From Mytilus californianus (taxonomy: Eukaryota): DNA of 64,000 nucleotides. Below, piece after piece: positions 2,495 to 44,268 of the stretch (position 1 is the first letter of the stretch; each line of letters begins with the position of its first letter). Below the pieces are notes generated by a model. It searched no databases. It was not told the DNA's origin and saw only the letters and a list, made by a program, of their open reading frames with translations. A program made the position numbers and the translations under genes. The stretch is from positions 108,562,001 to 108,626,000 of the forward strand of contig NW_026262679.1 of assembly GCF_021869535.1 (NCBI RefSeq). Reading direction: 5' to 3'.

Positions 2495-4620
2495 AGGAAG
2501 ATGTGGTATGAGTGCCAATGAGACAACTCTCCATCCAAGTAACAATTTATAAAAGTAAACCATTATAGGTCAAGGTACGGCCTTCAACACGGAGCATTGG
2601 CTCACATCGAACAGCAAGCTATAAAGGGCCCCAAAAATTACTAGTGTAAAACCATTCAAACGGGAAAACCAACGGTCTAATCTATATAAAAACGAGAAAC
2701 GAGAAACACATATGAACTACATAAACAGACGACAACTACTGTACATCAGATTCCTGACTTAGGACAGGTGCAGACATTTGCAGCAGGATTAAACGTTTTA
2801 ATGGTACCAAACCTTCTCCCTTTTTCTGAAACAACAGTATAACATCACAACATAGAAAGACACACTATAAAATATCAATTGGAAGGCTTAACTCAATCAA
2901 AAAACGTAAATTAACACACAATGAACGAATAACTTTGATCTGTGATACCTGACTGCAAATACATAGTTAATCAAAATTATAAGGGATAAATGACATGAAT
3001 AACTAAGGTCAAAAGTAAATAAACAGGTTGAAATAAAGTTAAAGTATAATACCACTGTGAAATGTTAAACAATATTTAGAAAATCATCACTTTTGAAAAA
3101 ACCTGCGTCATATTATACACAGGTAAATGAAAATAATTTTGTTGTTAAGTATACTTCTTCTTCTGTGTGTATAAAATCTTCCGTTTAGGAATACCAAGAA
3201 ATTTCTTTAATATCAATGAAACTAATCTAACACTTGGTACATATGGGGTGAATATCAACAATAAAACTATACAATTAGTGCTAGATAAAATTTCCTAAAC
3301 AGGTGCAAGAACATTATTTAAGGAGAAATGAAATAATTTTGATGTTCATAGTACGAAGTAGTGAAAATTTGTAGTAATTCCAAATAATCAAAGCTGGTAT
3401 ATAGACAAGATCCATGTCAACATTAAATAACAAAAAAGCATTACAACTAGTATCAACAGGTCAAGTTAACAAGAAAGTACGATTTGAGAGTACTCGCAGT
3501 AACTGACAGCTAGTTAAAAGCCAAAACAATTAATAATAAAAAATCATGCATCAGAGACTGAAATCAACTAAAATACATCCCAGGGATTTAGTATTTTAAC
3601 GTCATGAACAGTCAAAGAAGACATGACTTGTGCAATGCCAAAAATAAATGTATCGACAGGTAGTAGGATAGTTAGGAGTGACTTCTTTATAGATAAAAAT
3701 GAACGTGTGTGTGTCTCTATACATCCCGTTTGAAAAGAAAATACAAATTTAGTTATGTTTTAATTTGCTAATGACAAAATCGATATTAGTGCCAATGTAA
3801 ACTATATTTCCAAGCTTTAAGTACAATATTACCGTAAAATTTAGGATTTGAAATACCATTTTAATAAGTTTTCTACAGGTACAGCCAAATTTACGAATTA
3901 AATTTTTGTATCTATGAAAGAATTTAGTAAAAGTTTTAAGTAATTTATGGTAACGATATCCCTGACTTAATAATTTACCAATGATGCATTGATTACGTTC
4001 ATTAAAATCTATGACATCACTACACACACGGGCATACCGAATGAGTTGGGATATATAAACACCGTATGATGGAGCCAAAGGCACATCGCCGTCTAAAAAA
4101 GGAAAATTAACAATAGGGAATGAAAAATCGTCTCTTTTGTCTTAAATTTTAGTATGGAGTTTCCCTTTAGAAATTGAAATGTCTAAATCTAGAAAAGGAC
4201 AACTGCTGCTGTTTATGTTAGATTTAGTTAAAGTAAGTTCTTTTGGGTAAATTTCGGTAGTATATTTAGAGAACTCTGGATTATTTAACGAAAAAATATC
4301 ATCCAGATAACGGTAGGTATTGTTGAATGTATCAACCAAATGTAAAAATGATGTGTCTTTACTGAGTTTGGTCAAAAACTGAGATTCATAGCAACACAGG
4401 AATAAATCTGCTATTAAAGGGGCGCAGTTAGTGCCCATAGGAATACCTACTACCTGACGATACACTTTATCGCCGAAACGTACATATATGTTATCTAGGA
4501 GAAAATTTAAAGCTTCAATCATATCCTCACATTTCCAGTAAGTGTATCTAGCATATTTTCCTTTTTCGTTACAGAAAAAGGCTTTAAACGAGTTACAGCA
4601 AATAAATTTACAATGAGATT
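2495..4620 (-). mobile_element. 5'-truncated Penelope-like element: RT pseudogene (about 3749-4620) plus about 1.2 kb of putative 3' UTR ending at the agatgtggtatgagtgccaatgagacaactctcc motif
   Basis: ORFs 4142-4522 and 3749-4084 carry the PLE RT motifs QVVGIPMGTNCAPLIADLFL, YRYLDD, FLDLDI and APSYGVYISQLIRYAR. An in-frame stop and frameshifts separate them. The 3' UTR boundary is inferred from shared repeat motifs. Confidence 0.85.
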
Positions 4621-4980: not shown

Positions 4981-6218
4981 CAATTGTGAAATTAATGATA
5001 TTTTGTATTGACAAACTTAGGTGTTGACAGGACAAAACATTTTGGATCCGAGTATTGTGCTAGGAGCAGGTTCTTGTTTAAAATCATTCATAGTAGTTGG
5101 GGAAACTCTTAAAAATTATCCCTATGATCCAGAAAATAATATCGTTTCACCTCTTAGCACATCCGAGTACAGATAAAATGTCGGCAGTCACGTACACATC
5201 GAGATAAACATATTCAATGACTTCCCAATGTCACAGCAACTCTTAGTTATTTGGTTTTTTTTTGTTTGTTTATTAAATCGTGAATGGAAAACGTATCCGA
5301 TATTGGTTGTTCATATTGTTCATTGTTGGTGCTTATAAACATGATTAAGTCATATTAAGTTTCGAGTTGTATACTAAGTAGAATTGAATAGAAGTGTGTA
5401 CCATGTGTACGTATTATAAACTTCTACGTAATATCCTTGTTACTTAAATGAATCGATATATATGCATAACGTCGTTGACCTACTTACACGATTTGCTGTT
5501 TTGATATGCTAATAATATCTTGTTATTAACAGTACGTGGATAATACAATATGTAAACAATTTCTTACAAGCAGGTAACAATAACTTTTATTGTTTTGAAA
5601 TCAAATAATTGTAGATTTCTAATATTCTGTTACAGTAAATACCTTATTTTATAAAATGTTGGACTAAAAATAATGTGTTTTACTTTTGGGACAAGTTAAA
5701 TGTGTTGAGACATATCCGTGTGCATATTTTATGTTTAGATAATAAGCCTATTTTTCATTTTTTAAATGTATTTGTTTATATTTCAGTCATATTATTCCTT
5801 TTATTCCTATTCCGTTGCCATTCTGTAAACGCTGGTGAAAACTAACTAGTTCATGAGGGTCTTGATGGGGTTTACAGAATAGAGACTAATGGGCAAAAAG
5901 TGCAGAATAACTAGGCCCAACAAATAAAAAAAAGAGAAAAATAGGCAAAATACAGAATAGAGAATAATGGGGTGCTTAAATATAAAGTATAGAGAACAAT
6001 GGGTAAGAAATATAACTGAAGGATAGAGAAAAATGACATATAAAAAATTGATGAATACAGAAATGAAGGACCCACATCCAACCCCGTACAGGTGTCTGCT
6101 CCGACGTCAGGGTATTCTGATTACCGTCTCTACTTTCTGTTTGTTTTCCCCAAACAATTACAATTGAAGTCTTTTTGAAATTTGGTTGAAGCTTAATTAA
6201 TTCATCTAATTTAGTCAA

Positions 6219-7383
6219 GCATGATCGTGTGATTCCTCTTTGACGATGACATGATCGTGTGATTCCTTCTTAACGATATGGCATGATCGTGTGATTCCTC
6301 TTTGACGATGACATGATCGTGTGATTCCTCTTTGACGATGACATGATCGTGTGATTCCTCTTTGACGATGGCATGATCGTGTGATTCCTCTTTGACGATG
6401 ACATGATCGTGTGATTCCTTCTGAACGATATGGCATGATCGTGTAATTCCTCTTTGACGATGGCATGATCGTGTGATTCCTCTTTGACGATGACATGATC
6501 GTGTGATTCCTTCTTAACGATATGGCATGATCGTGTAATTCCTCTTTTACGATGGCATGATCGTGTAATTCCTCTTTTACGATGGCATGATCGTGTGATT
6601 CCTTCTTAACGATATGGCATGATCGTGTAATTCCTCTTTTACGATGGCATGATCGTGTAATTCCTCTTTTACGATGGCATGATCGTGTGATTCCTTCTTA
6701 ACGATATGGCATGATCGTGTAATTCCTCTTTTACGATGGCATGATCGTGTGATTCCTCTTTTACGATGGCATGATCGTGTGATTCCTTCTGAACGATATG
6801 GCATGATCGTGTGATTCCTCTTTTACGATGGCATGATCGTGTGATTCCTTCTGAACGATATGGCATGATCGTGTGATTCCTCTTTTACGATGGCATGATC
6901 GTGTGATTCCTTCTGAACGATATGGCATGATCGTGTAATTCCTCTTTTACGATGGCATGATCGTGTAATTCCTCTTTTACGATGGCATGATCGTGTGATT
7001 CCTTCTGAACGATATGGCATGATCGTGTGATTCCTCTTTTACGATGGCATGATCGTGTGATTCCTTCTGAACGATATGGCATGATCGTGTAATTCCTCTT
7101 TTACGATGGCATGATCGTGTGATTCCTTCTGAACGATATGGCATGATCGTGTAATTCCTCTTTTACGATGGCATGATCGTGTGATTCCTTCTGAACGATA
7201 TGGCATGATCGTGTAATTCCTCTTTTACGATGGCATGATCGTGTAATTCCTCTTTTACGATGGCATGATCGTGTGATTCCTTCTGAACGATATGGCATGA
7301 TCGTGTGATTCCTCTTTGACGATTGGATGATCGTGTGATTCCTCTTTGACGATGGCATGATCGTGTGATTCCTCTTTGACGAC
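6219..7383. repeat. Minisatellite of about 38 interleaved 30-bp and 32-bp units
   Basis: Units catgatcgtgtgattcctcttttacgatgg (30 bp) and catgatcgtgtgattccttctgaacgatatgg (32 bp), read directly. They explain all the overlapping short ORFs at 6215-7452. Confidence 0.97.
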
Positions 7384-8069
7384 TAATGTATTTTTACTGC
7401 ATGTTACATGTATAAATGAACAGGTACACATTAATCTACGAGTGAGAGTCACTGCTTCTTGTTATTTAGTACCAACCTATTTTGTCTACAAATTAGTATG
7501 CATTTTCGGATCAGTCTGAAGACATTATTGCTAATTTTTAAACAACATAATTATTGTGCGCAGTACTTCGCATCACTCGGAAACGAAATGTATTAGTTTG
7601 TATCTGAAAGGTATAAGTACATAACTTAACTTTCTATGTGTGTTTTGCTTGCTACATCATTCTTGTTCACTTTTATATAAATATTCAAACATTGTATAAT
7701 TCTATATAACAATTGCAATGTTGAATCATCTTTTAGCAGTTGGTTTTATGTTCAGCAATGCGACATCATGTTGTTTGAATCTGAAAGTAACCTCTCACAC
7801 TCAAACTATGGATTTAGTTTAAGATTGAAAATACTTTGTTTTCCTCGGTCAAAGTTGGTCCCTTTTGCCTATACAGGTCGCAATTTATTTATCCACCTTT
7901 GAGCGTTGCAATTTTTTTACACAAACATGATTGATTGTTCGTTTGGATATTTGTGTGGCATATAATACGCAAATATTCCTTGACGCCTTTCCTTGTTCAG
8001 GACATGTGACCGTATACAACATTTCTCCGGATTTCTATATTTTACCCATGTACTTTTATATAAAAAAAT

Positions 8070-8700
8070 AAGATGTTATGATTACAAATTAGAACACTAT
8101 CTAGCATATAATAAAGAATAACGATGTGAATAACTACGGGCCTTCAGTATTGAGCAACCCCATACCGTACGATCAGCTGCAAAAGGCCCCTGAATATCAA
8201 GACATTACTTTAAGCGAAAGTCAACTATGGCAGACGAAAACCCACTGAACTACAGGTTCTTGACTTGAGACAGACACATAAAGAATGTGGAAGGTAAAAC
8301 ATGTTTGCGAATCACGAAAGGTATTGGACAAATCTTCACTTCGACCAGATATTTGAATTGTGCAGCATTTTTAAAGGTTTGGTATATCTATTTGGAAAGT
8401 CTTTCGATGGAATCATTCAGATTTAGGAGCTATTTTCATAACCTACGTTACAACTTTTTCAATGTTCAACCCACCATTTTTTCTTTAAAATGTCCTGTAC
8501 CAAATCAGGAATATGGCAGTTCGTTTCTATGTGTGTTGGCGTTTGTTTTTGTTGCACTTCGGTGTTCCTGTTGTTCCTTTGTTTTCCTCTTATAGTTGAT
8601 GTGTTTCCCTCGGTTTTGGTTTGTAACCCGGATTTGTTTTCTCTCAATCGACTTATGACTTTTGAACACCGGTATACTAGTACTACTGATGCCTTTATTT
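8070..8700. repeat. Two oppositely oriented PLE 3'-end-type repeat fragments
   Basis: 8070-8310 resembles 2495-2830. 8465-8700 matches 30620-30845 (ccaccattttttctttaaaa.gtcctgtaccaa.tcaggaatatggcagtt...cggatttgttttctctcaatcga). Confidence 0.75.
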
Positions 8701-9262
8701 ATAATACATGCTCGTTCTGATCATATACCATGAATATCCTGTGTATGCATCTTGTCTCGCTCAATGGTTCGATTCCCACCATTTTCAACTCCGAGTTAGT
8801 GTATCGACACCTTTATTTTTAAAAGAGATGGAAGGGATTTCCATGTTCAATTACTACACTTGAAGGTTCAAAATGCATATTTCACTTTTATATCCGTTAA
8901 ATAGTATTTTACACTAATGTGTCTAACTTTCCAAACAATAAATTATTGATAACCTCGAAATAGAGAAAGGTTTCAAACTAATATAAATGAAAATGAAATA
9001 TCGTATGATAAGAATACATTAATTATAAGATATGAGAGTTAATAAACTATATATTATCATTTAGACAATCTGACTGATTTATTCAAAGGGGGACGCACTG
9101 AATTATTAACTAGAATGGTTCAAGGTCTTTAAAATAAATAAAGCACCAAGGGAGGCCATTGCTTGAATTTTAAAATGTTTCAGAAGAAGAGACACGGAGA
9201 AACGCTTTTGCTGTACATGCGTTTCGACAACCATTCTGCTAAATGCTAATCGCTTCTTCTCA

Positions 9263-10405
9263 TTTTTATACGACCGCAAAAAATTTTGCGATCGTATATT
9301 GGGATCACGTCGTCGTCGTGGTCGTCGTCGTCAGCGTCGTCCGAAGATATTTGGTTTCCGGACAATAACTTTAGTAAATCTGTAAATGTAAATAGAAATC
9401 TATGAAATTTAAACACAAGGTTTATAACCACAAAATGAAGGTTGGGATTGATTTTGTGTGTTATAGTCCTAACAGTTTAAGAATTAGGGGCCAAAAAGGG
9501 GCCCAAATAAGCATTTTTCTAGTTTCCAGACAATAACTTGTGGAACGGTGTATGGATCTCTCTGAAATTATACCACAAGTTTCCATACCACAAAAGGATG
9601 GTTAGGATTGGCTTTGGGGGGTTATGGCTCAAACCGTTTAGGAATTAGGGGCAAAAAAGGGGGAAAACAAGGGTTTCCTGGTTAATGGACAATTAAAAAA
9701 GTACAATGTTATGTTTGGATTACCTCCCTTACACTGCTTTTAAATTATGTATAAAGAAATGTTGGATTGTTTGAGGTGATTAGCTGTCAATTTATTTTTA
9801 GAAGTTACTATTTAAAAATGCTGATTAAGGAATATTAATTTTAGCCATGATTATGTATGTCATTTCTATTTTAAGACTTTTATAATGTATTTAAATGGGT
9901 AATTATGGTTGCAAACTCCATTAGAAATTTGAATTGAGATTATGACCCATATCTTGAGGGAAAGAATTTTTTTGGGGGAAAAAGGGAGGGGGAGAAGTGA
10001 AAAAAAAGGGGGGGTAAAAAAAGAAATTGTGAGGGGGGACCATTTTTTTTCTCATTTCAGATTTCAGAAAATAAAAAGAAAATTTCTTCAAATATTTTTT
10101 TTTTGCCAAAAAATGGGGGGGGGGGGGGGGGGGGTAATTTTTTTTTGTAGGGGGGGGGGGGTAAATTCGCAACAGAATAGTGTATTGCACAAAAGCAAAA
10201 AATTCATAATTAAATTCAAATCAAATAACCAATTCTAAGTTCTTTGACTACAGTTATTCTGTGTCAGAAACCTATTATGGGTCAAATATTTAATTACAAT
10301 CCAAATTCACACCTGTATCAAGAGCGAATATTGTGTCCATTTTTGACCCAACTGTTCAAGGTTGGACCTCTGCGGTCGTATCCAGCTGCGCTCGCGAAGC
10401 AATTT
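9263..10405 (+). mobile_element. Helentron-type non-autonomous element (HINE/DINE-like) with internal tandem subrepeats
   Basis: T-rich 5' end; subterminal inverted repeat atacgaccgca (9268-9278) / tgcggtcgtat (10371-10381); (gtc)n microsatellite at about 9309-9341; central repeats of about 160 bp; short 3' palindrome. A homologue lies at 59303-60255. Confidence 0.8.
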
Positions 10406-10512
10406 ATTAACTATAACTTTAACTGCATGGTTCATGAAGCAAACTGACCAAATTTATATCAAAACACGCTGTTGTTATTTTTAACGAATGTTCTTCTTTT
10501 TTCAGCCTTAAG

Positions 10513-11984
10513 ATGGAAAGAAAGTCGGATGAAGCTTTGAATTGCTGTAAAATTCCTATATTCAATGGACAATGTACATCTTGGGAAGACGGACCAAATT
10601 ATCTGCCATTTTCAAAAAAATATCTTAGATCTTTGGATCTGTTTTCCTCAAATGGAAAGACAGCAGATATAACTCCCAAAGAAAACGAAGGTAGGCACAT
10701 TATATATATATATATATACTACTTATCTGATATAAAACTAAAGATATGTTGTCTGGTTGCTTATGAAGCATTTTTTCCGACAAAAACCAAATGAAATAAA
10801 GTGAATCAATTTAAATGTTTGGTTGACCGCGCGGCCTTCAACAATAGACACAGGCATCTGTTATTTTCGGCATAAACCCTTCTGATACTCTGCTATCATA
10901 TTTTGTTTTGAAAAAAGTCTTTGCTATAACAAGGAAATTTTCATGGAAAATACAATTTGTTGAAAGTAAGGTCGTGTGCACACGTATAGTAATTTCGTCT
11001 TCAAAGTTCTCCTCTATTGTAGATACTACCAATTTAACCTTCAGGTCAAGGACAAATTCGTTTCCGCAGACTGCCAAAACAAGAAATAATAAACAACATG
11101 CAATTTCTGAAGAAATTGATAGGCTAGGATTAACTGCTGAATCGGTATATGGTGATAAAAAATCTGAAATTGACGAAAATGAAAGTAATTTGAACGAAAA
11201 TAACGACAGTCGTTTTTCGACAGGATATACAGGAAGTAAATTGTTAAAAGATGTCCAAAATGTAACAAAGTATTCAAGTTCGAGGGAAGACAATTCTTCC
11301 AAAGAGAAAAATGCAGGGGAAATTAGAAGCGTCAATATAGAAAAAAAGCTTAGCGAATATGGACATTTCGATATATTAGATATTAATAACATTGCCGCTA
11401 TTCCACGCAAATCATCTACTAGCACAGCTTTGCAGAAAGCGAAAGGTTGTAATAGATATCAAGATACCTTGGGATTATTCTGGATGAATGAAGATACTTT
11501 ACCATTAAGCTCACCAATGATGGATAGAAAGGTTAATGCATGTAGTGCAGACTCAGGATGGTCAAGTGACCCAGGTGATCCACAGAAAATAAGACATAAC
11601 AAAAGGCTATCAAAGAAAAGTGCGCAAAATCAGATCGCAGGTGAACGTTCAAACGTTGAAGATACCAAATCTATTCAAGTTCAACCTGAAAATGAACAGA
11701 GTACAATTGACATTAAAAAAGGACACATAACGAAAATAAAACATTCTTCAAACACAATTGAGACTAACAATTCCTCTAAAGACCAGAACTTATCAAATAT
11801 TAAAACTTTTAAAAATAAAACAAATATAGGATCGAAACACGTGACAGCCGAACATCACGATAGTGGGGAGGAGGATATTCATGAACACACTTCTTTCCAG
11901 AAACAAACTTTACAATGGGTCTCGACTAGCAAGGTTCGACAAAGTAGACGTGAACACAACATGCTTTCTCCTCCAACCTTTTGA
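10513..11984 (+). CDS. Uncharacterised protein, paralogue A (predicted 379 aa), low-complexity and probably disordered
   Basis: Coding exons 10513-10690 and 11023-11984. Acceptor ttttttcag ends at 10505; donor GAAG|gtagg at 10691; acceptor ctctattgtag at 11022. The phase-1 intron keeps the frame (...ITPKENE-D-TTNLTF...). Motifs and the splice junction are shared with the gene at 21224-23010. Confidence 0.8.
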
Positions 11985-14174
11985 TGTATTAACCATAATG
12001 TTCCGTGTATGTTTATCCTCTGATATGAATTTTCAATGTTAAGAGTGATTTATTCTTACTTCCATAACTTGGAGAAGTAAAGAAGTTGTGTTTGGTACAG
12101 TTTCGTGGGGAGAACACTTTCAATATGTCATGGCTTTACTGTATTTGCTGTTATGTATTGGTAATCATGAATAGCAATTTTAACTTTTTTATGTACCAAT
12201 ATGAAATTTTTGTATCATCCTGATTGTCCTAATAAGTTAAAGAATTGCAATTTTTCCCATAGAGTGTTGTGAATGTTCCACATTATTGTTGAGTTTTTAT
12301 TAATTATTAAATATCACATAATCAGGTTATTTGATCATACACAAACCCAAATTAACCTTCAACAAGCGCAACATTTATCATTCTGGAGTTCTATTCCACG
12401 ATTATTTGAAGTCCGCCAAAACTGCTGGTGGTAAATTAAAGTTCCTATAGCAAATAACTTTCTTATTTTGAAATATTTCTGTAATTTCAAAGCATTGAGT
12501 CAAGCAGTTCGTCTAATCACAAATAAAATGAAATAATTATATAAGTACCAATAAAATAAATTGTCATGTATGTAGATCATTTGACACTCGGGAGCTTCCC
12601 ATAAGTAAGTCAACGTTTTACTTGTATAAAAATGTTAATTAGAGGCGGACAAGTTATATACATAATATATGTTTTCATGATATTGTTTTTGTTTATTGTT
12701 TATCATTGAAGGTCTTTGATCTGGTACTATCTGTACCCTTCAATATAAAAAAATAGATAAGCATTGTTAATCAGTCCATGAGTTGATGTAGCCGGGTAAT
12801 CTATAATACTAAGAGAACGAATTTTCAGGATTTTAATGAAAACTTAGCTCTAACTGAACAATTATATACAGTTTAGATTGTGCATTTTGTGTTCGCATAA
12901 GCATACATACTCTTCAAGGCAAAAGCTTTCATCGAGTTTATTTGCAAATGCTTTTTGTAGGCACTTTTGCAAATTAAATTCTCCCATCTAGAAATTTCTA
13001 GTATTCACAAATATTCGCACTCGAATGAAACATAATTAATATAGATTGTGCTATCTTAATATTTTCATTGGTTTCATAAAGTCATTTACAATGTTTGTGT
13101 GAGTATGTTCGTTATAAAACAGATCCTCAAACAGTATATGCAAGACATATCCTGGACTAAGAATCCAATTAAGATCGCTAATTAAGCGTTGATTGAGAAT
13201 TGAGTAGATTAATTGGTCTATTACGCTACGACAGAGGCTAATGATGTCTATTTCGTATCCCAGTAGTATCGTTGCCGCATGAAACTAGCATGAAATGAGT
13301 ATAGGAACTATTCAAGCGACCATACGTTATTTGAACAATAAACTATCTTCAGTCTATTGAGGGAGACATCCTTATCACGTCTCTTTTCCAAATGATTCGG
13401 ATGAAGTAATGAAGCTTAGTGTATTTTATTAGGCATAATATGTTATAATCAAACAATTTATACGAATACTCTAAAGCATTTCTTTATTAAAATTAACCGG
13501 GATTTACTGAAATGGGGAATAAAAGTATTTTATTTTTCTACGTCGGATTATTTTACGCCTTGTATTATGGCAAAAGATATATGCTGTTATGGATCTCGGC
13601 CCACACCTCCACACCTATCTCATAGGACAAGCCTGGATGAGCTATCCCTTGGGTTGTCGTCGTCCGTCAGTTAACTGCAGATTTAAAATTCCGAATCACC
13701 TCTAAAACTACTCTTAGATTGGCAGGAACATTGCAAAAATAGGTACAATAAAATTTCCTCATTTTGTTCTAATCGGAAGAAAAACATGGCCACAAAATGC
13801 AATCATTATTGATTCTGTTTGGTCTATTTTGAAAGTTCTCCCCTGATAAACAGAACTAAATCTATTGAATCTTTAGTCGAATGATGTTTGGGAGACCTTT
13901 TACAAAGATGTCATAATTATTCCGATATGACGTATGATATGGCAATTACCTTTCGGCCGGCAGAAGTTCTCCACATACAACAACAAGGCATTGTATGTAG
14001 GTACTTTGACCCTTCAGAAAGAATCATCCTTTCGAGATGCCCATGATTGTGTGCAACTGACCCAATGGGAAGTAAAATTCTCATCTTTCCTAATATAAAT
14101 AATAGATGATATGTACCAAACTTGCCAAAAAATCTAATTTAAAATTTCTTATATTTCGGAATGTTTGGCCCTTA

Positions 14175-14375
14175 AAAGAGGGGCGAAAGATACCAGAGAG
14201 ACATTCAAACTCATAAATCGAAAATAATCTGACAAAGCCATGGCTAAAAAAAAAAAGACAAATTCGTGCTTTATTTGGCCTTTTATCTTTTGTGATTCGA
14301 GCGTCACTAGTCTAACGAGTCTTATGTAAACGAAACGCGCGTCTGAGTGCAAAATTATAAGCCTTGTATCTGTTT
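14175..14375. repeat. PLE 3' terminus (minus strand) fused to a hammerhead-type repeat (plus strand)
   Basis: agaggggcgaaagataccagagagacattcaaactcataaatcg matches 32630-32675. It is followed by gagcgtca...gagtcttatgtaaacgaaacgcgcgtctg. Confidence 0.7.
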
Positions 14376-15699
14376 GATTTTGTATCAATTTTTGAACAAA
14401 TATATTCTTCAAAGTTGTTAAATTGATAAAAACTTGGCCACCATGCAGAGGCAGTTCTTGATTTTGATATGTCAATTCTTTAACGTCTTCTTCTCTGAAA
14501 CTTTAAAAAATGTGTATGAATGACGATTGGGACGATTTATTCCCGATTGTCCCACTTTTTAAAATTTTAGAGTTTTGATTGCCTGATTTTATTACGTTAA
14601 ATGTTCTTAAATAGAAACTATAATTATAGTTTTTCTTTTACAGTATCAAATTTAAGTAGATTAATATATGAGCATATACTTTAGTAGTTGATATCAATTT
14701 TATAAATGTAAACACGAATTGTTGAATAAATCATCAATTAAAATGCACTTTTGATTAAACAATATAACATATTTGTTATAAAAAATATTTCATGATGTTT
14801 ATTTATAAATCAAATATCAATATATGTTTAAAATTTAAAGCGATTTAAATTTTAAACACATGCACGCACTTTTTTCTTCTTTTCGTTTTTATAAGCGCTC
14901 AGACTGGAAGGTTTGGATGTAGATATAAAAAGATGTGGTATGATTGCCAATGAGACAACTCTCCATCTAAGTCACAACTTGTAAGGAGACTATTAAAAAA
15001 ACATTTACAATAACAATATTACAAAAGCATTAGCTATTTTGTAACCTAATCATTAGAATTTACATCATCAATTTAAAAATAGAGGGCAAGATCTCAACCT
15101 ACAATATCTTTTTGGGAGAAGAGGTAAATGTGACTCAGTAATGACATTAGTGTCCTCTGAACATATACAATTTCATTAAAAAGATGAACTTATTTCGGTG
15201 TAATGTCCAGTGGCAAGTTATATGCATAAGCAGGACGAGATGATGTTGATGTTAGATGAATATGAAACCTTCTTTGAATAGAAGTATATCGACATATCAA
15301 GCCTGATCTTTAATGTGCTAGTAGTCAAGGTAACAGTCCGCAGGAAGACATGTCACCCTACACAGACAAATTTTCTGACTCATGGCCGACCAGTCTTTGC
15401 TCTTACTTCAAAATGCAGCATGCTTTGCGGAGAAGAAGCAAATTCCAACTTTCCATTCTTTGGTTTGACCCGGTCAGGGTTAATTCCTTTTTACTGTGTT
15501 TAAATGTTAGACCAGATGTCGATAAAATTGACATAGCTGCACATTATTTCGAATTTATGTTTATGATCTTCTAATTCAAGGATTTTCTTATAAATGTTCT
15601 TAAAAAAAAACTCTCCCTATTTTTGTTCGCTTGATTTGAGCGTTTACTGGAATATGTATTATCGCTATTTTACGAATTGTTCCTTTGAGCTTGCTGACT

Positions 15700-15940
15700 G
15701 ATAATTTCCGTTCTCAGCGGAGTCGAGTGATATGAAAACGGAGTCGAGTGATATGAAAATTATCGCTAGAAACTAAGGGAACACGTGCCGTTGTCAAGGA
15801 AATTAACAACGTCTTCATTGGTAAAATAGCGATAAACAGATTATCATTGGTCATCTTAACTCGATTGCTTTTCTCGCTTTCGCCGTGCCGGCTCAAGCGA
15901 GAAAATCAATCTCGTTGAGATAACCAAAGATAATCTATAA
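15700..15940. repeat. Dispersed repeat with a long hairpin; partial homologue at about 57620-57750
   Basis: 21-bp tandem duplication cggagtcgagtgatatgaaaa; stem gattgcttttctcgctt / aagcgagaaaatcaatc (15863-15911); ccggctcaagc...aaaa.atctcgttgaga...ataatctataa shared with about 57700-57750. Confidence 0.55.
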
Positions 15941-16189
15941 TTATTTTTTATTGTTTTATGAATAAATTTGTTATCAGCCTAAAATCTATCAATTTGAGAA
16001 CAAATCCCTGAAATTTTGTAACATGTAAAATTATTCGTTTATCTTTGTATTTCTCTTAAAAAATCTTTTTTTTTTATTTTATCCTTGATACTTTTTTTAA
16101 TTACAATTTTTTTTCAATTATATATATGATTAATTTACAATTTATGTTATTGGAATCTATTTAATCTTTTATGTAGTCAAAATATATTT

Positions 16190-16705
16190 TTAATACGCCC
16201 GTCTTTTAAGACGGGACGCATTATGCTATATCGTTGTCCGTCCGTCCGTCGTCAACACTTCTGACTATAACTCAAAAATTCTTTAAGCAATGTTCATGAA
16301 ACTTGGTGAATTGTTTATTCATATTGACATAAGATCCCTTTCGATTTCTAAAAAATTCTGATTTTAGGTTTTGGAGTTTTGGGACTTAATTCATAAAAAA
16401 GGGGGAAACGCTTTGAGCAGTTTTCATGAAACTTTGGTGACTTGTTTATGTCTATTGAAAATAAGCTCCCTTTTATTATTATTTTTTTATAAATTTCTGA
16501 AATGATATGGCGGATTTATTACTACTATTTTATTTTATTTTATTTTTTGTTGTTGTTTTTTGTTGTTTTTTTTTTTTTTTTTGGGGGGGGGGGGGTCTAT
16601 TTGAGCATTGCTCACAGTATTTTTAGTTAATCATACAGATTCATTTAAAGCATAAATACGAGCTTAAATGGCGACGGGCGTATCATACGCTCATAGCGCA
16701 GCTCT
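16190..16705 (+). mobile_element. HINE-like non-autonomous element
   Basis: Subterminal inverted repeat atacgcccgtc (about 16193-16203) / gacgggcgtat (about 16674-16684); (gtcc)n microsatellite at about 16236-16250; internal repeated catgaaactt(t)ggtga; 3' hairpin gcgc-type end. Confidence 0.75.
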
Positions 16706-17949
16706 TTATTGTATTAAATTGATCTTTATTTTGACACCAGTTTAACAAAATATCACAAAACAAAATAAAAATCGCTATCAAAACAATTCCCTTTTGTCCC
16801 ATATTTAAATTTCCCTATTGTCCCCAAAACATCTTCTAGATTGTCCTACAAAATTTCATTACTTTCTTACCTGTAATTTTAAAATGTGGGACAATCGGGA
16901 AGACATCATTGGGACACCCTAAACTTGTAATGTCAATAAATACTACAACTCCATTGACTTGAACAGTATCCAAATTTCTATCATAATACATATAGGTTTC
17001 CAATGCAACATTGCTGTAACTTTATTTCATAGACATAAGACTTTAACAGTTTCTCAAAATATAATGAAGTCTGATTAAAAAGAGAAACCAAGATTTCGTT
17101 AAATGGAATTGGATATCCTGCATTTATCATGATTTTCAATAACATATGATCAAATAGCTGAAAGACCCCCTCCTAAATTATTGAAAGCTATCATTCTGCA
17201 TTGACAATAATATCTTTGTGTAATTCGGGCTAACGCCTTCATGCGGTATCTAATACTTGCTAAACGTAAATAGTCTATAGGTTAGTAAACATTTGTATGA
17301 CAATAATGTGATAAGGTCACCACTGGACAATGTCGATGGCCTTCAGGCTTTTTCCGTCGTCCAAAATAAACTAACCTTGAACTGCTATATAACAAGTTAA
17401 AGTGTTTATCCAAGGAATATTACCAAACTTACTTCTCAACGGCTGGTATCAATGTAAGTACATTTAGTATATTTTTGCATACAAATGCATGGGTACTAAC
17501 TCAAATGTAATTTTACTATTGAGTTGGTGGTATTAATGATAATATAGCCCTTTTGTGATTAAGTGTCGCATGCGAAGTAGAGTCAATCAGTGATGAATAA
17601 CCCCTTCCTTCCGCGAAGTCATCACATTCAACTCAAAATCGATTTGTAATATTCAAATGTGGCATTAAAATGGTATTACAAATCATTTAAACCAGATATC
17701 TAAAGTATTTGTTATTCACTGTACGTTTTTTGCAGAGAGTATTTTCTACATTTTCAATGTTCAGCGCCACATATCTTATTCAATTGTTAGGATAGACAAA
17801 TCTACTACAAATCTAAATGAAAGGTTCTGTAAAGTGGTTCGAACGGATCAACGGCGGCAAAATGTTTACTGCCACTGAAAAGGAGCAAACATTTTGCCTT
17901 GCAACAAATCATCTCTAGAAGTTGTTGCAAGAGCTCTTTATCTTCGATA

Positions 17950-18018
17950 AAATTGAGAATGGAAATGGGGAATGTGTCAAAGAGACAACAACCCGACCAA
18001 AAAGCAGAAAACAGCCCA
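17950..18018. repeat. Short fragment of the aattgagaatggaaatggggaatgtgtcaaagagacaacaacccgacc repeat family
   Basis: Identical motif at about 24686 and about 61346. Confidence 0.9.
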
Positions 18019-19499
18019 ATGTCCATTTTGACTAGACGTGGCTGCGTATCAATACATCCCTCGCAGCCAAATTGCCGGGTTAGTTTACTGCTGGATATAT
18101 GATTAACTGGTCATCATGTCTTTATTACAGCCAACTCTTGGGGTTCCGTCATCTGTGACAATAAATCAGTTATTTTTTTGATGGTGGTTTATATGTCATA
18201 TTTGTCGATTAAAACAATACCTTTCAGAAGATAAGCATCTGATCATTAGTTGTAATTTTGGAATTTTATTGTTTTAAAAAAAAAAATTTTTGTGTATCAT
18301 CGCATTTCTCCATAGACTATCACGTGATATTTGTGTAAACATGTTTTATAGAAAGAATTATTTATACAGGGAATACTAAATTAAGTTTTAATGTGTATAT
18401 GCATTCGTCTATACAAGTGTCATCAAATTTTATTTAACAATGTATTTCATTTTTTTTTCAAACAGTTATGGATCTTAAAAAAAGCTTAACTCGCCAACAA
18501 TTTCAGATAGATATTCTCTGAAAATTGGTTTATAGCAAAAGCTTTATGCCCATACTTTTCAAAATTTATTTATCAATATGCACCAAAGATTAATATCAGT
18601 GAGACAAGCTTCTAATGCAGTTATCTCGATAATTGATGAAACCAAGGTCATAAATATGCAGGTGCATATATATTTCAAATAACATAATTTTACAGTTTTT
18701 TTTAAATGTAAGATTGTGGTTTCTAAATAACCTTTAATTAGTATGCTTGTATATACCGATATAAATAAAAGCTTAAACGTAAGAAGAATTACTATTTGTT
18801 GTTCCCACTTTCACATTGCAACTTTACATGTTGGAAGTTTATTCAGCAAAATATTCCAAAAACAATTCCAAACATCGACCAGAATTGTTTATAAAATTAT
18901 TCGATGTTTGGAATCATTTTTGGAAGATTTTTTTAAATAAACAATCAACATGTAAAGTTGCAAATGTGAAAATGGGAACAATAAAAAAGTGATTCCACAC
19001 ATTGTTGTAGAACAAAAAAAAACATGCGCAATTGAAGATTTTGAATGTATTGAATTTGGAATACTAAACAAAACACACAGGACATTTCATAAATTCCTCT
19101 CTAACCAATTTCTGGTGTACATGTTGTGTAGAAATGACAACATTTATCCATTTGTTTTTACAGAATATAATTTGATCGTAAAAACATGTCATGTTTAGTA
19201 AACAAATCTAAAGGCCATACAAGGCTAAATGCGATCGTGCTACAAATGTAACAATATTTACAATATAAGTACTATATTTGTGTCGTATCGAAACTTTATG
19301 GGATATTCATCTTTTGAGGAAACTTCGCAGACACCGGTTGTTATAAATAGAACATGAACATGATTGTTATTCATAAATTTGGTAAGTAAAATGAATTTTA
19401 GTGATCAGAAAGAGAAAATAGATTTACTACGTTTTTAAAGGACCTGTATGTATGAATATGTACACAATTTCAAGTTAGTTTTGAGGATCTGCCTGAAAA

Positions 19500-20250
19500 C
19501 AAGAATCATTTTTACATCGCGATGACCGTGAGGGCATTCCGATGTATTGTTGCCGACGAGATTTCTACTTACGTAACTTTCGTGTTTGACTGGTAACCGA
19601 TCTATAAATACGCGGACATTATCGAGTGCAAAATAACATTCCTTATCGCTTGTTATAAATTCATTTCTTAAATGAATACTCATAAAATATTTTTGTTTAG
19701 AACATAAATTAATAATATGAAAATGTTTTGTCGTTAGAAATATATATATAAGTAAAAAATCATTGATATTACTCTATGCACACGTACAGAAAAATTGTGT
19801 TAACGCATGCGGAAGAATATCTCAAGAACGTTTTGCGGGAAAATATAAATGCCTGCTCAAATCCAATCTATTAGAAAAAAACATATTATTACAGAAGAGT
19901 GTCCACAATGCACTTGCACTGCACTATTATTAGAATAGTAAAATAGAATGATATACAAATGAATGAAAATTATATTTTATACATGTAACTGTTATATGCA
20001 AACATTAATATAATATATAACAACAAACCAGAGTATACTGATTTGTATCACTACAATATAATAGTTATTACGGTGACGTTGAATTTCCTGTCATTTATTC
20101 ATTATCCACGCACGAACTTGTCTCAGAAAAAAATTATATCTCTGTACATTAACCTCACTTTCAGGTATACAGATGTGATTTTTTTTCTGAGACAAGTGCT
20201 TGTGACCATCCACAAGAACTTGCGGTCATCCGATGTTCAGTACTTTGATT
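19500..20250. repeat. Degenerate dispersed element with an inverted homologue at 53411-53900; contains a hairpin at 20116-20197
   Basis: taacgcatgcggaagaatatctc.agaacgttttgc...atccaatctattagaaaaaa...acagaagagtgtcc and ttttctgagacaagt...tgcggtcatccgatgttcagtact match the reverse complement of 53411-53900. Confidence 0.8.
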
Positions 20251-20616
20251 AAAATTGACATGTTCGGTTCCGTTTTGACAATAATGCCTTATATAACTAG
20301 TGTATGATTGGTAACTTATTTAATGGTGGTTTAAGTTTAAACCTAGTCGTGTATCACTACTTGTTATATGTATTACCTTGTACATGTAACACATTGTCTT
20401 TTTGATATGGAAGAAAAATTCGTAAGTTAGAGATACATTACCATGAAATCGATTATTCAGTTGTTGTTTGCTTGGCGTCCTGTGGCAAACAGTTCATGCA
20501 TATTCAGGACGAAAACAAGTTATCATAAAAACATGACTGTTGTAGGGTCTGAAGTATACGTGAACTTGAGGACAGGGCGGAGGATTTTACTGTGACTGGA
20601 AAACAATGCTTGTATG

Positions 20617-20622
<6 letters not shown>

Positions 20623-20663
<41 letters not shown>
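20623..20663. repeat. (TA)n microsatellite
   Basis: Perfect TA run read directly. Confidence 0.95.
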
Positions 20664-20665
<2 letters not shown>

Positions 20666-21223
20666 TGTAAGAGACTTAGCCACACAACATGTCAATGTCC
20701 TCTAGGAAGTTGCTATGGTTCTCAACTTGTAAACACCACTACAGCACTTTTCAATACTGACACGTGTCTTGGATTATGAAATTGATCATTTAGGTTATTT
20801 CTACCTCAATGGATGGACAGCAATTCTTTCTAGATATATTGTCCGTCCGCATGCAGTCAGTGGTTTATTTAGTCATTTAGTCATGTTGAGTAGGGTCTGC
20901 TTATCCTTCTGGAGCAACTGGGATCAGTCTTTCGGTTTTGTAGGCTGGTGTTTGTTGTTTTCTTGTTTTTCGTGTTCTGCCATGGATTTGTCGGTTTCTG
21001 GTTGTCCCTTTGTTATATTCTGCCTCTTTATTATTAGTATATAGTAGAAGCTAATGTAGTATCATTACTACTACTGTGTGACTGTCCAACTTATTTGACC
21101 AACTCAGAAGCCAGTCTTCAGTACAAGATTAAGAATTTACAGGAACAAGTTCAACCTTCTTCATTTTGTGTATTCGTATGAAAATTTATATTTGCAGACA
21201 CATTTTGAACCAGTTTGTTAACG

Positions 21224-23010
21224 ATGTTTTCAAATAAGAGAAATGCAATTCCAGGAACCATCACACGTTCTAGTGGAAACAGTTTCTTTGATGACGAAGA
21301 TGATGATGGTGTCGTAATATCAGAACTTCAAAATTCCTCTCGACCATTCAACTTGTATTCAGCTCTTGAAAGCTTCGGGGATACAATTACTGAAGAAAAT
21401 GAAGGTATATAGCTAATTGTGATATTGCTGGTAGATTGTTGATTTTGGATTTACTTACTTATGTTGGGACTGGGTTAACTATCTGGATCTTTTCTTGAGT
21501 AACTGATTTTTGTCATTTTATTTTTTTTAACATTTGTCAGACTATGAAAATAAAATAAATTACGAACATAAGCATACAATTTACTTGAACTGCAGAAGAA
21601 CGATTGTATCGTCAAAAGCATCTCTGGAGTTGCAATCTATTATATAACGACACTCAAAGAAATTGAATAGAAAAAAGTGTCCATACGGGATCAACTATTT
21701 TATTCTTAGTTTTACAACATTACGGTTCGAATGCAAAAACATTTATGTATTGATACATTTTAGATACTTAGTACTTACTCTTAAAAAAGTCTAATACGTA
21801 CGTCCACTTACAAGTATATCTTATTTCAGATTCTTTTGATGATCCGTGCAGTCCGCAAATACACACTCCAATCAACAACGACAAAGACAAAAGTACTTTA
21901 GAAAATTCAATTACAAAGAAAATTGAAAACCTCAGATTAACTGCTAAATCTGATAATGCTAATGTGAAATCAGTCAAACGATTTTCTTACAAAGAAAATT
22001 CAGAAATAAGAAAAGGCCGAAAGAATAATCATACGAGGATGCATAACTCAGATAAAAGTATAATACATCAAGATTTGTCCTGTGTTAAACGAAGGTCTAG
22101 TTTAAAGGATGTAACACAAATGTTTCCTTGTGGATGCGATGAACATTCGACAAACACGGAAACAAAGAGTAATATGGATTTTAAAGAATTTAACAGATGC
22201 GTGCAATTTGATAATTCGGTGCTAAAAGACTCGCAATATATGAAAAGAAGGTCTAGTTTCAGCGAGATATCACAAATGATTGCCTCTAATAAGAATGACA
22301 ATATAAAAGACATTAGAGTGAAAAGCAGTCATGTAGATAAATCCTGGATTGATCGTGACGGTCGATTTTCTGAATTGAATAAACAATCGATGGGTAAAGA
22401 TGTAAAACAAACGAAAAGACGGTCAAGTTTAGATGATTTAAATAAAGTTTCATCTACATTTCCATCCGAAAAATACACAAGTGATAACAAAAAATTAGAA
22501 ATAAAAGACAATGTGATTTTCCAATTTTATCAATCGGATGGTATCGATTCAAACGATATAATATCGATACCACAAAAATCAGCGACTAAAGCAGCATTAC
22601 GAAGTACAAAAAGTGCTATAAACATGCGCGAGTTCTTGATTAGCTCAAAAATACATATTGTTTCATCAGAAAAAAGGATGCTAAATTGTTCGGAAGGCCA
22701 AACAATAATAGACAAAGTTGCAATGACCGCTGCCGCACACGATTCAGGAGGGGCGATAAAAGATGACAACGCTTTGCAAAGAAAAAAGAATGAGAATAAA
22801 GTCGACAAATCAGTTCATTTAATTTCAGACAGTTCTGTTATTAAGAATGCCGAATTTAAAACTGGAACGGGTAATAGTGATATTCAAAACAATGATCTGA
22901 ATTCATTTGAAAATAATTCCGTCCAAACTAAACCATGGGAGTGGTTAGCTAAAAGCAAAATTCGACAAAGTAAAAGAGAACATCATATGATTTCTCCTGC
23001 CTGTTTTTGA
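21224..23010 (+). CDS. Uncharacterised protein, paralogue B (predicted 453 aa), low-complexity, with three internal KRRSS repeats
   Basis: Coding exons 21224-21404 and 21830-23010. Acceptor tatttgcag ends at 21197; an in-frame TGA at 21206 precedes the ATG; donor GAAG|gtata at 21405; acceptor cttatttcag at 21829. The phase-1 intron keeps the frame (...ITEENE-D-SFDDPCSP...) and runs into the 21964 ORF. Confidence 0.8.
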
Positions 23011-24684
23011 ATTTTTCAATGTTGAATTAAATTAAAATGACTCTGTTACAACTTATTCTTATATTTTATGTAACATGATTAATAGACTAAAGTCTCTTTA
23101 TAATCCGGATATATATAGGTCTATAGATATGTAAACTATACAGAAATCCAACGACAAATATACCAAAGAAATTTATATAGTACATGTATCCTTTTATATT
23201 CTTTATTCAAAACAAATCTAAGACTGCTACAGTGGAGACAGCAAATCTTTAGGACTATTTTCTTTTATCCTTACTTTTACATATTAAATTCGATAACATT
23301 CTGTACTGTTAGATCTATTCAATGATAATAATAATACTAAGTTCAAGGTTTAACGTGTTATAGATAGAATAATACTTTCAGTTCGATAAGACTACGACAA
23401 GGACTTTTATTGTCGAATTGGGACCCTGTTGTTGTATATGTATTAGATGTAATCTTTTATTTCTGATGCATTATCCCCTCAGATAGCCCCTCAGATATGA
23501 GACGATTACATCTGATTTACATTTCTCTGTCATCAAATTGATACCGTATCACTGTATTTGTATGGCAATAAGAATCGTTGGATTAACTTGTCTTTTTCTG
23601 GTTTAATTGCCAAAATCTGAATTTTTTGCTGATAAATGATAACACTTCTATGTATATCATAATAAAACCGATCTCTGTATCTACTAATAAAATAACAAGG
23701 TTCAATTTGTTAGCCGGCATGACGTAAAAACGACGAATCAAAGAATTCAACTTTATATATAATTAATATAGGAAAATGTTATTGTTTAAAAAATTCACCA
23801 TTCCAGGCCCTTTTGTTTCCCACATAATTAATATTAGCAATAATTAACAAGTTTCGGGTCGAATCTAATACAGATACCAATAGTATATGTCACATGTAGT
23901 TTCAAATTGTAGTAACTGTTACCTTCTGTAAATCCCTCCTTTATCAGGAGAACCTGGAATTTTTCCAAAAGTTTTTTTTTTATATCTATGTTACACTATA
24001 GTACACTATTTAACAAGTCTGTTTTGTTCCACCTCAATGCCACTATTAATTTTGGCCAATTAGTTAAGGAATTAAATTTAGTTTATAGTAAGTTTATTGT
24101 AGTAAGAAAAACAAGACGGGTTCAAACAGAAAGATTTTGAAAACAGAGAAAACTCTGCGCATTACAATCAGCATCACTTCAGATGACAATACGAATACTA
24201 AAAATCCAGGCTAAAAATAAGGCATAGGTACTTTAATTCAGTCGTGGACCCGTCGCGGGTGTCACGTTCTAGTAACCATAATTATTATATCTATACTATT
24301 AAACGAGAAGACCTCATTTTGTGTGTCGCTTCTCTTCCTTCCACAATAAATTAATCATCATGCCTCTGTGTCCTATAGGTACCATACATAGTCGCATTTG
24401 TCATCCTCGCTTATGATTATTCAGTTTGGGTTATCAAATTATTTTGGGAGGAAAACGAAAATAAAGGCGTCCGGATATTGTTTCCGTCATCGGACGGACT
24501 TTTAAGTCATAGAAAAGACTTCCGTTTAGGACTGTTTTAAAATTACACATAATTTTCATAAGTACTTGGGGACAGGACAATTATTTTCGCGTTTTTCTGT
24601 ATACTGTAAATAAAGTGTATTTGATATTTACTATCAATTCCAAGTTTACTTTCCACTGCGGTCACTGATATATTATATAGAGAT

Positions 24685-37633: not shown

Positions 37634-44268
<6,635 letters not shown>

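What the first reader, a model, noticed from the sequence alone, without database searches (positions are those of the whole stretch)
10513..23010. Tandem pair of unrecognised paralogous genes with a conserved exon junction and a novel C-terminal motif
Genes A and B are otherwise highly diverged and low-complexity. Both have an acceptor just before the ATG, a first coding exon of about 60 codons ending IT(PK/E)ENE at an identical GAAAAYGAAG|GTA phase-1 donor, and one long terminal exon. Three more blocks align: AISEEIDRLGLTAES / SITKKIENLRLTAKS; DINNIAAIPRKSSTSTAL / DSNDIISIPQKSATKAAL; and the extreme C-terminus QWVSTSKVRQSRREHNMLSPPTF* / EWLAKSKIRQSKREHHMISPACF*. Islands of conservation in disordered sequence are typical of short-linear-motif scaffolds or regulators. 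I cannot assign the family, so this is the best candidate for an undescribed system in the window.
Basis: partly seen in the sequence, partly recalled or inferred. Interest (0 to 1): 0.75.

Follow-up and report, generated by a model that had tools for sequence, protein, structure and literature searches.

The report
Unnamed disordered mussel gene pair
Two neighbouring mussel genes are real, expressed, spliced paralogs of a small unnamed family of floppy (disordered) proteins.

Summary
The window is Mytilus californianus. Gene A (LOC127735742, 379 aa) and gene B (LOC127735740, 453 aa) match RefSeq "uncharacterized protein" models residue for residue.

- **Gene structure.** Both genes have three exons: a 5' non-coding exon, an acceptor 7 or 26 nt before the ATG, a coding exon of about 60 codons ending at a phase-1 donor, and one long terminal exon.
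- **Expression.** RNA reads and contigs from three studies show gene A transcribed from the + strand and spliced at 10690|11023. B's junctions are shown only by a close relative's transcript.
- **Paralogy.** BLASTP gives E 5e-9 for the C-terminal tail. hhalign gives 96% probability over 218 collinear columns.
- **Third paralog.** LOC127734949 lies 47 Mb away on the same chromosome and keeps the same phase-1 intron.
- **Selection.** dN/dS is 0.47 for A and 0.60 for B, which is weak but significant constraint.
- **Structure.** AlphaFold2 predicts near-total disorder (pLDDT about 40).
- **Family.** There is no Pfam or PDB match. An exhaustive profile search of 1.84 billion proteins found only 8 representatives; every one that carries a name is Mytilus.

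My best reading is a mussel-restricted family of intracellular disordered proteins that act through short docking motifs and basophilic-kinase (PKA-type) phosphosites. That function is inferred, not shown. Interest is modest. The scan had not noted this family on other DNA.

The parts
5497..5573 (+). Gene A 5' non-coding exon; donor GT at 5574. The 5' end is approximate.
   Evidence: The clipped part of M. californianus RNA reads at 10503 matches 5541-5570 exactly. The relative's transcript L009 maps to 5497-5573. The sequence reads CAAGCAG|GTAACA.
10506..10690 (+). Gene A coding exon 1. ATG at 10513, 59 codons plus 1 base, phase-1 donor GAAG|GTAGG. Contains the RSLDLFSS motif at 10627-10650.
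   Evidence: Sequence. RNA depth is 15-28 here and zero in the intron. Contigs in runs X5 and X8 bridge to 11021.
10691..11022 (+). Gene A intron, GT...AG, 332 nt.
   Evidence: Zero RNA depth from 10694 to 10989 in all four runs.
11023..12450 (+). Gene A terminal exon. The coding part runs to the stop at 11982-11984. The 3' UTR continues at least to 12450, the end of the stretch I laid.
   Evidence: RNA depth is 17-35 throughout. It is 100% identical to P0006, LOC127735742.
11100..11144 (+). Gene A block AISEEIDRLGLTAES, the family-wide I-S/T-x-E-V/I-x-x-L-G-L-T-A motif. It is the only segment that AlphaFold2 models with moderate confidence, as a helix.
   Evidence: AlphaFold2 helix at residues 82-93 with pLDDT 66-70.
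11379..11432 (+). Gene A block DINNIAAIPRKSSTSTAL.
11913..11981 (+). Gene A C-terminal tail, 23 aa ending in Phe-COOH.
   Evidence: BLASTP E 5e-9 against the B tail. Q, E and the terminal F are invariant across all 21 aligned family members.
19277..19381 (+). Gene B 5' non-coding exon; donor GT at 19382.
   Evidence: The relative's transcript L008 maps its positions 1-105 here at 93% identity. The sequence reads AAATTTG|GTAAGT. This was not tested with M. californianus reads.
21198..21404 (+). Gene B coding exon 1. The acceptor AG is at 21196-21197, the ATG at 21224. It holds 60 codons plus 1 base and ends at the phase-1 donor GAAG|GTATA. Contains the RPFNLYSA motif at 21341-21364.
   Evidence: The model length equals RefSeq P0001.
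21830..23077 (+). Gene B terminal exon. The stop is at 23008-23010. The 3' UTR reaches at least 23077.
22084..22440 (+). B-specific expansion carrying three K-R-R-S-S-(L/F) sites at 22084-22113, 22240-22269 and 22411-22440. Each fits the R-R-x-S-hydrophobic consensus.
   Evidence: The region is an insertion relative to A in the alignments.
22546..22599 (+). Gene B block DSNDIISIPQKSATKAAL.
22939..23007 (+). Gene B C-terminal tail, 23 aa ending in Phe-COOH.

Best explanation
A and B are two functional, transcribed, three-exon protein-coding genes of Mytilus californianus (LOC127735742 and LOC127735740).

Origin. They arose by an old tandem duplication inside a small, unnamed gene family. The third M. 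californianus member, LOC127734949, sits 47 Mb away on the same chromosome. The family is known so far only from Mytilus and from a few transcriptome or assembly contigs of unidentified organisms, which I infer to be other mussels.

Protein. The products have no signal peptide and are almost wholly disordered. What selection keeps is a fixed order of short motifs:
- an N-terminal R-S-F-N-L-F element;
- the acidic E-E-x-E/D|D exon junction;
- a short amphipathic helix, I-S/T-x-E-V-x-x-L-G-L-T-A;
- one or more basophilic-kinase sites (R-R-x-S-hydrophobic), triplicated in B;
- a D-x-N-x-I-x-x-I-P-x-K-x-x-T-x-x-A-L block;
- a basic C-terminal tail, W-x4-K-x-R-Q-x2-R-E-x2-M-x4-F-COOH.

Most likely mechanism (inferred). 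They are intracellular adaptor or regulator proteins that dock on folded partners through the helix and the tail. Their binding is switched by phosphorylation at the R-R-x-S sites by a PKA-type or related basophilic kinase. The A lineage has additionally acquired an R-x-x-S-x-P site of 14-3-3 type.

Shown here: gene structure, expression, paralogy, constraint, predicted disorder and the absence of a known family. Inferred: subcellular location, kinase, partners and role.
For: - Identity and gene models: (100% identity to RefSeq proteins of exactly the predicted lengths).
- Expression and splicing of A. Depth is 15-35 on the exons and 0 in the intron. At least 95% of first mates lie on the minus strand, which means + strand RNA in a standard stranded library. 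Contigs from runs X5 and X8 (two separate studies) bridge the junction, and run X21 (a third study) shows the depth pattern.
- Three-exon structure of both genes.
- Paralogy.
- Same phase-1 junction in LOC127734949 (GATG|GTAAGA ... TTTTAG|AT).
- Tree: A and B form a clade (support 99/97) apart from the LOC127734949 group.
- Conserved order A, (A2), B on one strand in M. trossulus.
- Constraint: dN/dS 0.47 for A (Fisher P 9e-5) and 0.60 for B (P 0.002). Non-synonymous change is lowest in several conserved blocks, including the tail. The reading frames are intact in four to five Mytilus species.
- Disorder: mean pLDDT 40.7 for A and 40.3 for an outgroup member. About 67-71% of residues are disorder-promoting.
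- No known family.
- Narrow distribution: 8 representatives at E<=1e-3 among 1.84 billion proteins. Named members are all Mytilus.
- Phosphosite motifs.
Against: - No experiment or tissue metadata bears on function. The run metadata were coded.
- The R-R-x-S, 14-3-3 and PDZ-like motifs are short patterns that also occur by chance. The 14-3-3-type site is specific to A. A's own R-R-x-S site is degenerate (S-R-F-S).
- dN/dS of 0.5-0.6 shows that much of each chain is nearly free to change.
- The AlphaFold2 alignments were shallow (21-24 sequences), so low confidence does not prove disorder.
- B's junctions in M. californianus rest on the RefSeq model and a relative's transcript, not on reads I laid.
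Confidence: 0.6

Rival explanations
1. A and B are very diverged members of an already named, widely distributed metazoan family of disordered proteins. The homology is simply beyond the reach of the searches run here.
For: - Disordered proteins lose detectable similarity quickly. A and B are only about 24% identical to each other.
- The exhaustive search used an A/B-weighted profile.
- The follow-up word search scored only 8000 candidates.
Against: - No Pfam hit for any of seven family members or for the tail alone.
- No PDB sequence hit at E<=10 with three different profiles.
- The profile search read every one of 1.84 billion representatives and returned no protein from any RefSeq-annotated non-Mytilus mollusc.
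Confidence: 0.12
2. They are young, fast-evolving lineage-specific genes whose products have little sequence-specific function. Only the tail and a few residues matter, or the proteins serve a bulk property. Examples would be a reproductive or stress protein under relaxed or diversifying selection, rather than motif-by-motif docking.
For: - dN/dS is 0.47-0.60, and many 30-codon windows have non-synonymous change at or above synonymous change.
- Copy number varies between species: an extra A2 copy exists in the M. edulis complex.
- B has an internal expansion.
- Both A and B sit on long branches, about 1.5 changes per site.
Against: - The same motifs are kept in the same order across A, B and the much older LOC127734949 branch.
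- Selection is significantly purifying overall.
- The reading frames are intact in all Mytilus species sampled.
Confidence: 0.2
3. The open reading frames are not real genes: they are chance ORFs, pseudogenes, or remnants of a mobile element.
For: Composition is low-complexity. Retroelement fragments lie elsewhere in the window.
Against: - Stranded RNA coverage with a clean intron.
- Spliced full-length transcripts in a relative.
- Orthologs with intact frames and dN/dS below 1.
- Only two copies in the window and no dispersed copies.
Confidence: 0.02

Closest known systems
LOC127734949 of M. californianus (P0017) and its Mytilus orthologs, also 'uncharacterized'
   Same: - The same three-exon plan, with an acceptor just before the ATG.
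- The same phase-1 intron after E-E-x-D/E.
- The same order of motifs and the same kind of tail ending in F-COOH.
   Different: - Only about 22-25% identical to A and B.
- It keeps F-E-P-Y-W-V-E and extra R-R-x-S-S-x-x-x-L sites that A has lost.
- Its tail ends in T-S-F, a class I PDZ-type ending, whereas A ends in P-T-F and B in A-C-F.
- It lies 47 Mb away.
Small disordered PKA-substrate regulators such as DARPP-32, inhibitor-1 and ARPP-19/ENSA (compared from my own knowledge; not a database hit)
   Same: - Intracellular, largely disordered chains.
- Activity resides in a few short motifs plus R-R-x-S/T phosphosites.
   Different: - No sequence similarity was detected.
- Their defining motifs, the PP1-docking K-I-Q-F and the F-D-S-G-D-Y core, are absent.
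- Phosphorylation of the mussel proteins is untested.
The unnamed disordered tyrosine-motif family reported by this scan on another piece of the same genome (s1-282011)
   Same: The same kind of object: paired mussel paralogs, nearly fully disordered, defined only by an ordered set of short motifs, with no Pfam family.
   Different: - It is a different family, built on tyrosine-centred motifs and reported across molluscs, brachiopods and nemerteans.
- The family here has no such motifs and was found only in mussels.
- I did not compare the sequences.
Pfam PF17733 KPWE_dom (PEX14-like)
   Same: A weak local match to B residues 201-223, E 0.02-0.03.
   Different: - The score is 15 bits against a cut-off of 27.
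- The match covers half the model.
- It is absent from A and from all other family members. I take it as chance.

Membership tests
Unnamed mussel family defined here (A, B, LOC127734949 and relatives) | Phase-1 intron splitting a G|AT Asp codon directly after an acidic E-(E/N/T)-(E/D) run, about 60 codons after the ATG. | tested here: met
   A at 10690|11023, B at 21404|21830, and LOC127734949 at L010 10193|14383.
Unnamed mussel family defined here (A, B, LOC127734949 and relatives) | The I-S/T-x-E/K-V/I-x-x-L-x-L/F-T-A motif, about 25 residues into the terminal exon. | tested here: met
   L, T and A are invariant in 21 of 21 sequences.
Unnamed mussel family defined here (A, B, LOC127734949 and relatives) | A C-terminal tail with Q, E and the final F-COOH invariant, and W, K, R and M nearly invariant. 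| tested here: met
Any Pfam-A family | A score at or above the family's gathering cut-off. | tested here: not met
   Best hit is KPWE_dom at 15.3 bits against a cut-off of 27. Nothing was found for A or for five outgroup members.
PKA-type (basophilic kinase) substrates | The R-R-x-S/T-hydrophobic consensus, conserved across orthologs, and phosphorylated in vivo. | tested here: inconclusive
   - The pattern is present three times in B (K-R-R-S-S-L/F).
- It is present in LOC127734949 (R-R-Q-S-V) and is mostly conserved in orthologs.
- It is degenerate in A (S-R-F-S-T-G).
- Phosphorylation cannot be tested with these tools.
14-3-3 clients (mode 1) | An R-x-x-pS-x-P motif. | tested here: inconclusive
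   R-T-N-S-F-P or R-V-N-S-F-P occurs in A and A2 orthologs only. It is absent from B and from most outgroup members. This is a pattern match only.
Class I PDZ ligands | A C-terminus of the form S/T-x-hydrophobic-COOH. | tested here: not met
   A ends P-T-F and B ends A-C-F, so position -2 is not Ser or Thr. The LOC127734949 branch does end T-S-F.

The most novel reading that the evidence does not exclude
The invariant tail (W-x4-K-x-R-Q-x2-R-E-x2-M-x4-F-COOH), together with the L-G-L-T-A helix, is a new bipartite docking module for a conserved cellular machine. The family would then be a mussel-specific set of multi-site PKA-switched adaptors. A and B would be sub-functionalised copies: B with triplicated kinase sites, A with a 14-3-3-type site.
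Probability: 0.25. Interest if true: 0.5.

Novelty: new member of a known kind. Interest (0 to 1): 0.3.

Why it matters
Mussel genomes hold many 'uncharacterized' genes. This work turns two of them into a defined family. The family now has a diagnostic intron, an ordered motif set, evidence of expression and constraint, and a third, older member.

That gives experimenters concrete handles: a 23-residue tail peptide, a 12-residue helix and defined R-R-x-S sites, all usable in pull-down and phosphorylation tests. It also gives annotators a seed alignment for a new family model.

It does not by itself open a long-standing question. Lineage-restricted disordered families are common, and nothing here points to an unusual mechanism.

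Tried and rejected
- **Pfam.** I scanned the exon translations, the full-length database proteins, five outgroup members and the tail alone. The only hits were sub-threshold and look like chance: KPWE_dom, DUF1382, RYDR_Jsol and TMEM95.
- **PDB sequence searches.** Three profiles (A1, A2, A4) at E<=10 returned nothing.
- **Fold search.** I did not run it. Both AlphaFold2 models have pLDDT of about 40, and the tool warns that such models give meaningless matches.
- **Naming the organisms behind the outgroup transcripts.** A paper search for six accessions, including SRR26950822, SRR23320465, SRR26215657 and ERZ26273167, found none. BLASTN of those contigs against Mytilus DNA found only the coding tail and a retroelement fragment. 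The taxa stay unknown, and 'other mussels' is my inference.
- **Literature search** on Mytilus restricted or disordered genes found nothing on this family.
- **Earlier scan notes.** None exist for this family.
- **Motifs considered and dropped after reading the alignments.**
  - The KEN box in A and the D-S-G-x-x-S degron in A occur in M. californianus only and are not conserved in orthologs.
  - I also checked RVxF, SxIP, IQ, PIP-box, LIR and B56 L-x-x-I-x-E motifs by eye. None fits the conserved columns.
- **Extra copies.** I looked for further family copies in the window and found none.
- **Rfam** returned nothing in 5000-24000.
- **Joining exons.** Searches used exon references or the stored database proteins P0001 and P0006, and dN/dS was summed exon by exon with the split codon skipped.


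Full report
**What is there**

The window is Mytilus californianus DNA, from the 132-Mb record JAKFGE010000003.1 at about 108.57 Mb.

Gene A, on the + strand:
- The ATG is at 10513.
- A 178-nt coding part ends at GAAAACGAAG|GTAGG (10690).
- The acceptor is TTGTAG|AT at 11022|11023.
- The frame runs to the stop at 11982-11984.

Gene B, on the + strand:
- The ATG is at 21224.
- A 181-nt coding part ends at GAAAATGAAG|GTATA (21404).
- The acceptor is TTTCAG|AT at 21829|21830.
- The stop is at 23008-23010.

Both introns are phase 1 and split a G|AT Asp codon right after E-N-E. The exon-wise translations (59 + 319 aa and 60 + 392 aa), plus the split Asp, give 379 and 453 aa. The word search returned proteins of exactly these lengths at 100% identity. 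These are LOC127735742 (P0006) and LOC127735740 (P0001), both named only 'uncharacterized protein'.

**Transcription and splicing**

I laid four runs on 10250-12450.
- The raw-read RNA run X21 covers 10503-10693 and 11021-12450 at depth 15-35. It has zero depth from 10694 to 10989.
- At least 95% of first mates lie on the minus strand. In the usual stranded library this means + strand RNA.
- Contigs from two further studies (X5 record 11, X8 record 17) run straight from 10688 to 11021. Because of the shared AG, this is the same join as 10690|11023.
- Reads are clipped at 10503. The clipped 30 nt occur once in the window, at 5541-5570, just before CAG|GTAACA.

Gene A therefore has a 5' non-coding exon at about 5497-5573, with an acceptor at 10505|10506, 7 nt before the ATG.

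Two transcript contigs from a close relative carry uninterrupted 380-aa and 452-aa frames (L009 and L008). They are 88-89% identical in protein and are probably M. coruscus, which is my inference. Each maps to the window in three blocks:
- L009: 5497-5573, 10508-10693 and 11021-11985.
- L008: 19277-19381, 21197-21404 and 21828-23077.

B thus has the same plan: a 5' exon ending AAATTTG|GTAAGT, with the acceptor 26 nt before its ATG. Its junctions in M. californianus itself rest on the RefSeq model and this relative.

**Paralogy**

- Pairwise BLASTP of the terminal-exon products is significant only for the last 33 residues (E 5e-9). The other blocks give E of about 1.
- Profiles settle the question. 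hhalign of the A orthologs (A6) against the B orthologs (A7) gives 96.3% probability and E 1.6e-9 over 218 collinear columns. These run from A 102-379 to B 215-453 and cover the R-F-S block, the D-x-N-x-I...A-L block and the tail.
- An extra A-like protein from M. trossulus (P0012) matches B in the window at E 1e-7 over 173 residues. An outgroup member (P0018) matches A at E 2e-11 over 338 residues.
- Only two copies exist in the window.

**The wider family**

A profile of A and B orthologs (A1) was run against all 1.84 billion representatives. It found 8 proteins at E<=1e-3.
- Apart from A- and B-type sequences, these are P0016 to P0020 (333-391 aa).
- One of them, P0017, is a third M. californianus gene, LOC127734949, which also occurs in M. 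coruscus and M. edulis.
- It lies at 61.2 Mb of the same chromosome, 47 Mb from A.
- It has the same acceptor just upstream of the ATG and the same phase-1 junction, GATG|GTAAGA ... TTTTAG|AT.
I could not identify them.
- None of them belongs to a RefSeq-annotated mollusc. I therefore infer that they are other mussels, but this is not shown.

A maximum-likelihood tree puts A and B in one clade (support 99/97) against the LOC127734949 group. Both A and B sit on long stems of about 1.5 changes per site.

In M. trossulus the order on one strand is A, A2, B across 55 kb. A2 is a 298-aa A-type copy confined to the M. edulis complex. In M. californianus, A and B are 9.2 kb apart and there is no A2.

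**What is conserved**

Across 21 sequences the following elements recur in a fixed order:
- R-S-F-N-L-F.
- The acidic junction.
- I-S/T-x-E-V-x-x-L-G-L-T-A, with L, T and A invariant.
- An R-R-x-S-x-G site. It is degenerate in A (S-R-F-S-T-G). In B it is G-R-F-S plus three K-R-R-S-S-L/F sites inside a B-specific insertion.
- D-x-N-x-I-x-x-I-P-x-K-x-x-T-x-x-A-L.
- The tail, with Q, E and the C-terminal F invariant, and W, K, R and M nearly so.

Everything else is Ser/Asn/Lys/Glu-rich filler. About 67-71% of residues are disorder-promoting.

AlphaFold2 gives mean pLDDT of 40.7 for A and 40.3 for P0018. Only the L-G-L-T-A helix reaches about 66-70. The alignments were shallow, so this is supportive rather than conclusive.

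**Selection**

I computed Nei-Gojobori estimates exon by exon, skipping the split codon. M. californianus against M. trossulus gives:
- dS 0.25 and dN 0.12 (ratio 0.47) for A;
- dS 0.27 and dN 0.16 (ratio 0.60) for B.

Both ratios are significantly below 1 (Fisher P 9e-5 and 0.002). Non-synonymous change is lowest in several conserved blocks, including the tail. This is real but weak constraint, as expected for motif-only proteins.

**Comparison with known families**

- No Pfam family reaches its cut-off for any member or for the tail.
- No PDB chain matches at E<=10.
- The nearest functional analogy, from my own knowledge, is the class of small disordered PKA-substrate regulators such as DARPP-32, inhibitor-1 and ARPP-19. 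None of their defining motifs is present, so this is 'may work like', not membership.
- The class I PDZ ending (T-S-F) exists in the LOC127734949 branch but is lost in A (P-T-F) and B (A-C-F).
- The KEN and D-S-G-x-x-S patterns in A are not conserved in its orthologs.

**Verdict**

The genes are true tandem paralogs of an unnamed, apparently mussel-restricted, disordered protein family with a new conserved tail. However, the genes were already modelled in RefSeq, the family was not seen across Lophotrochozoa, and a scaffold or regulator role is still an inference.

My best mechanistic guess is motif-mediated docking through the helix and tail, switched by basophilic-kinase phosphorylation. I put this at about one in three. 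That the genes are real, expressed paralogs of an unnamed family I put above 0.9.

This is a new family of a familiar kind, and interest is modest.

**Limits**

- One read-laying run, spent on gene A only.
- One exhaustive search, run with an A/B-weighted profile.
- Coded run metadata, so no tissue information.

Noticed in passing
window 10223-10391 and 60076-60244: A dispersed repeat of about 170 nt, the two copies 83% identical. RNA depth is very high (about 200 in the raw run; word depth up to 13,700 in run X1), and many reads run on into unrelated sequence. It is probably a SINE-like element present in many transcripts. It lies in the first intron of gene A.
   Followed up: partly
window 38428-38757 (-) and 43738-44268 (-): A homeobox gene on the minus strand. 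The 38.4-kb ORF ends in the first half of a homeodomain (Pfam PF00046, 28.6 bits). I did not test which homeobox class it belongs to.
   Followed up: partly
window 33199-33678 (-) and 4145-4522 (-): Two related ORF fragments carrying a Y/F-R-Y-L/I-D-D box. The first matches reverse transcriptase below the cut-off (RVT_1, 21.8 bits against 29.6). They are likely decayed retroelement copies.
   Followed up: partly
window 5497-5573 and 19277-19381: Both 5' non-coding exons contain upstream ATGs. In A one is followed directly by TAA. In B there are three (at 19299, 19355 and 19361). These are possible small upstream ORFs.
   Followed up: no
L012 (M. trossulus CM071705.1, 73.26 Mb): An extra A-type gene (A2, 298 aa, LOC134715931) lies between A and B in M. 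trossulus and also occurs in M. galloprovincialis. It lacks the middle 80-odd residues of A, and its gene spans about 5 kb. It is absent from the M. californianus window.
   Followed up: partly
P0051 (M. edulis, 533 aa): A protein named 'SYCP3' carries folliculin-interacting-protein and Cor1 domains, plus a stretch 94% identical to 18% of LOC127734949. It is probably a chimeric gene model that fuses neighbouring genes.
   Followed up: no
window 11552, 10280, 10310: At these places every RNA read or contig laid differs from the window's letter (for example C in the window and A in the reads at 11552, 20 of 20 reads and all three contig runs). This is either an allele private to the reference individual or an assembly error. 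At 11552 it would change a codon of gene A.
   Followed up: no
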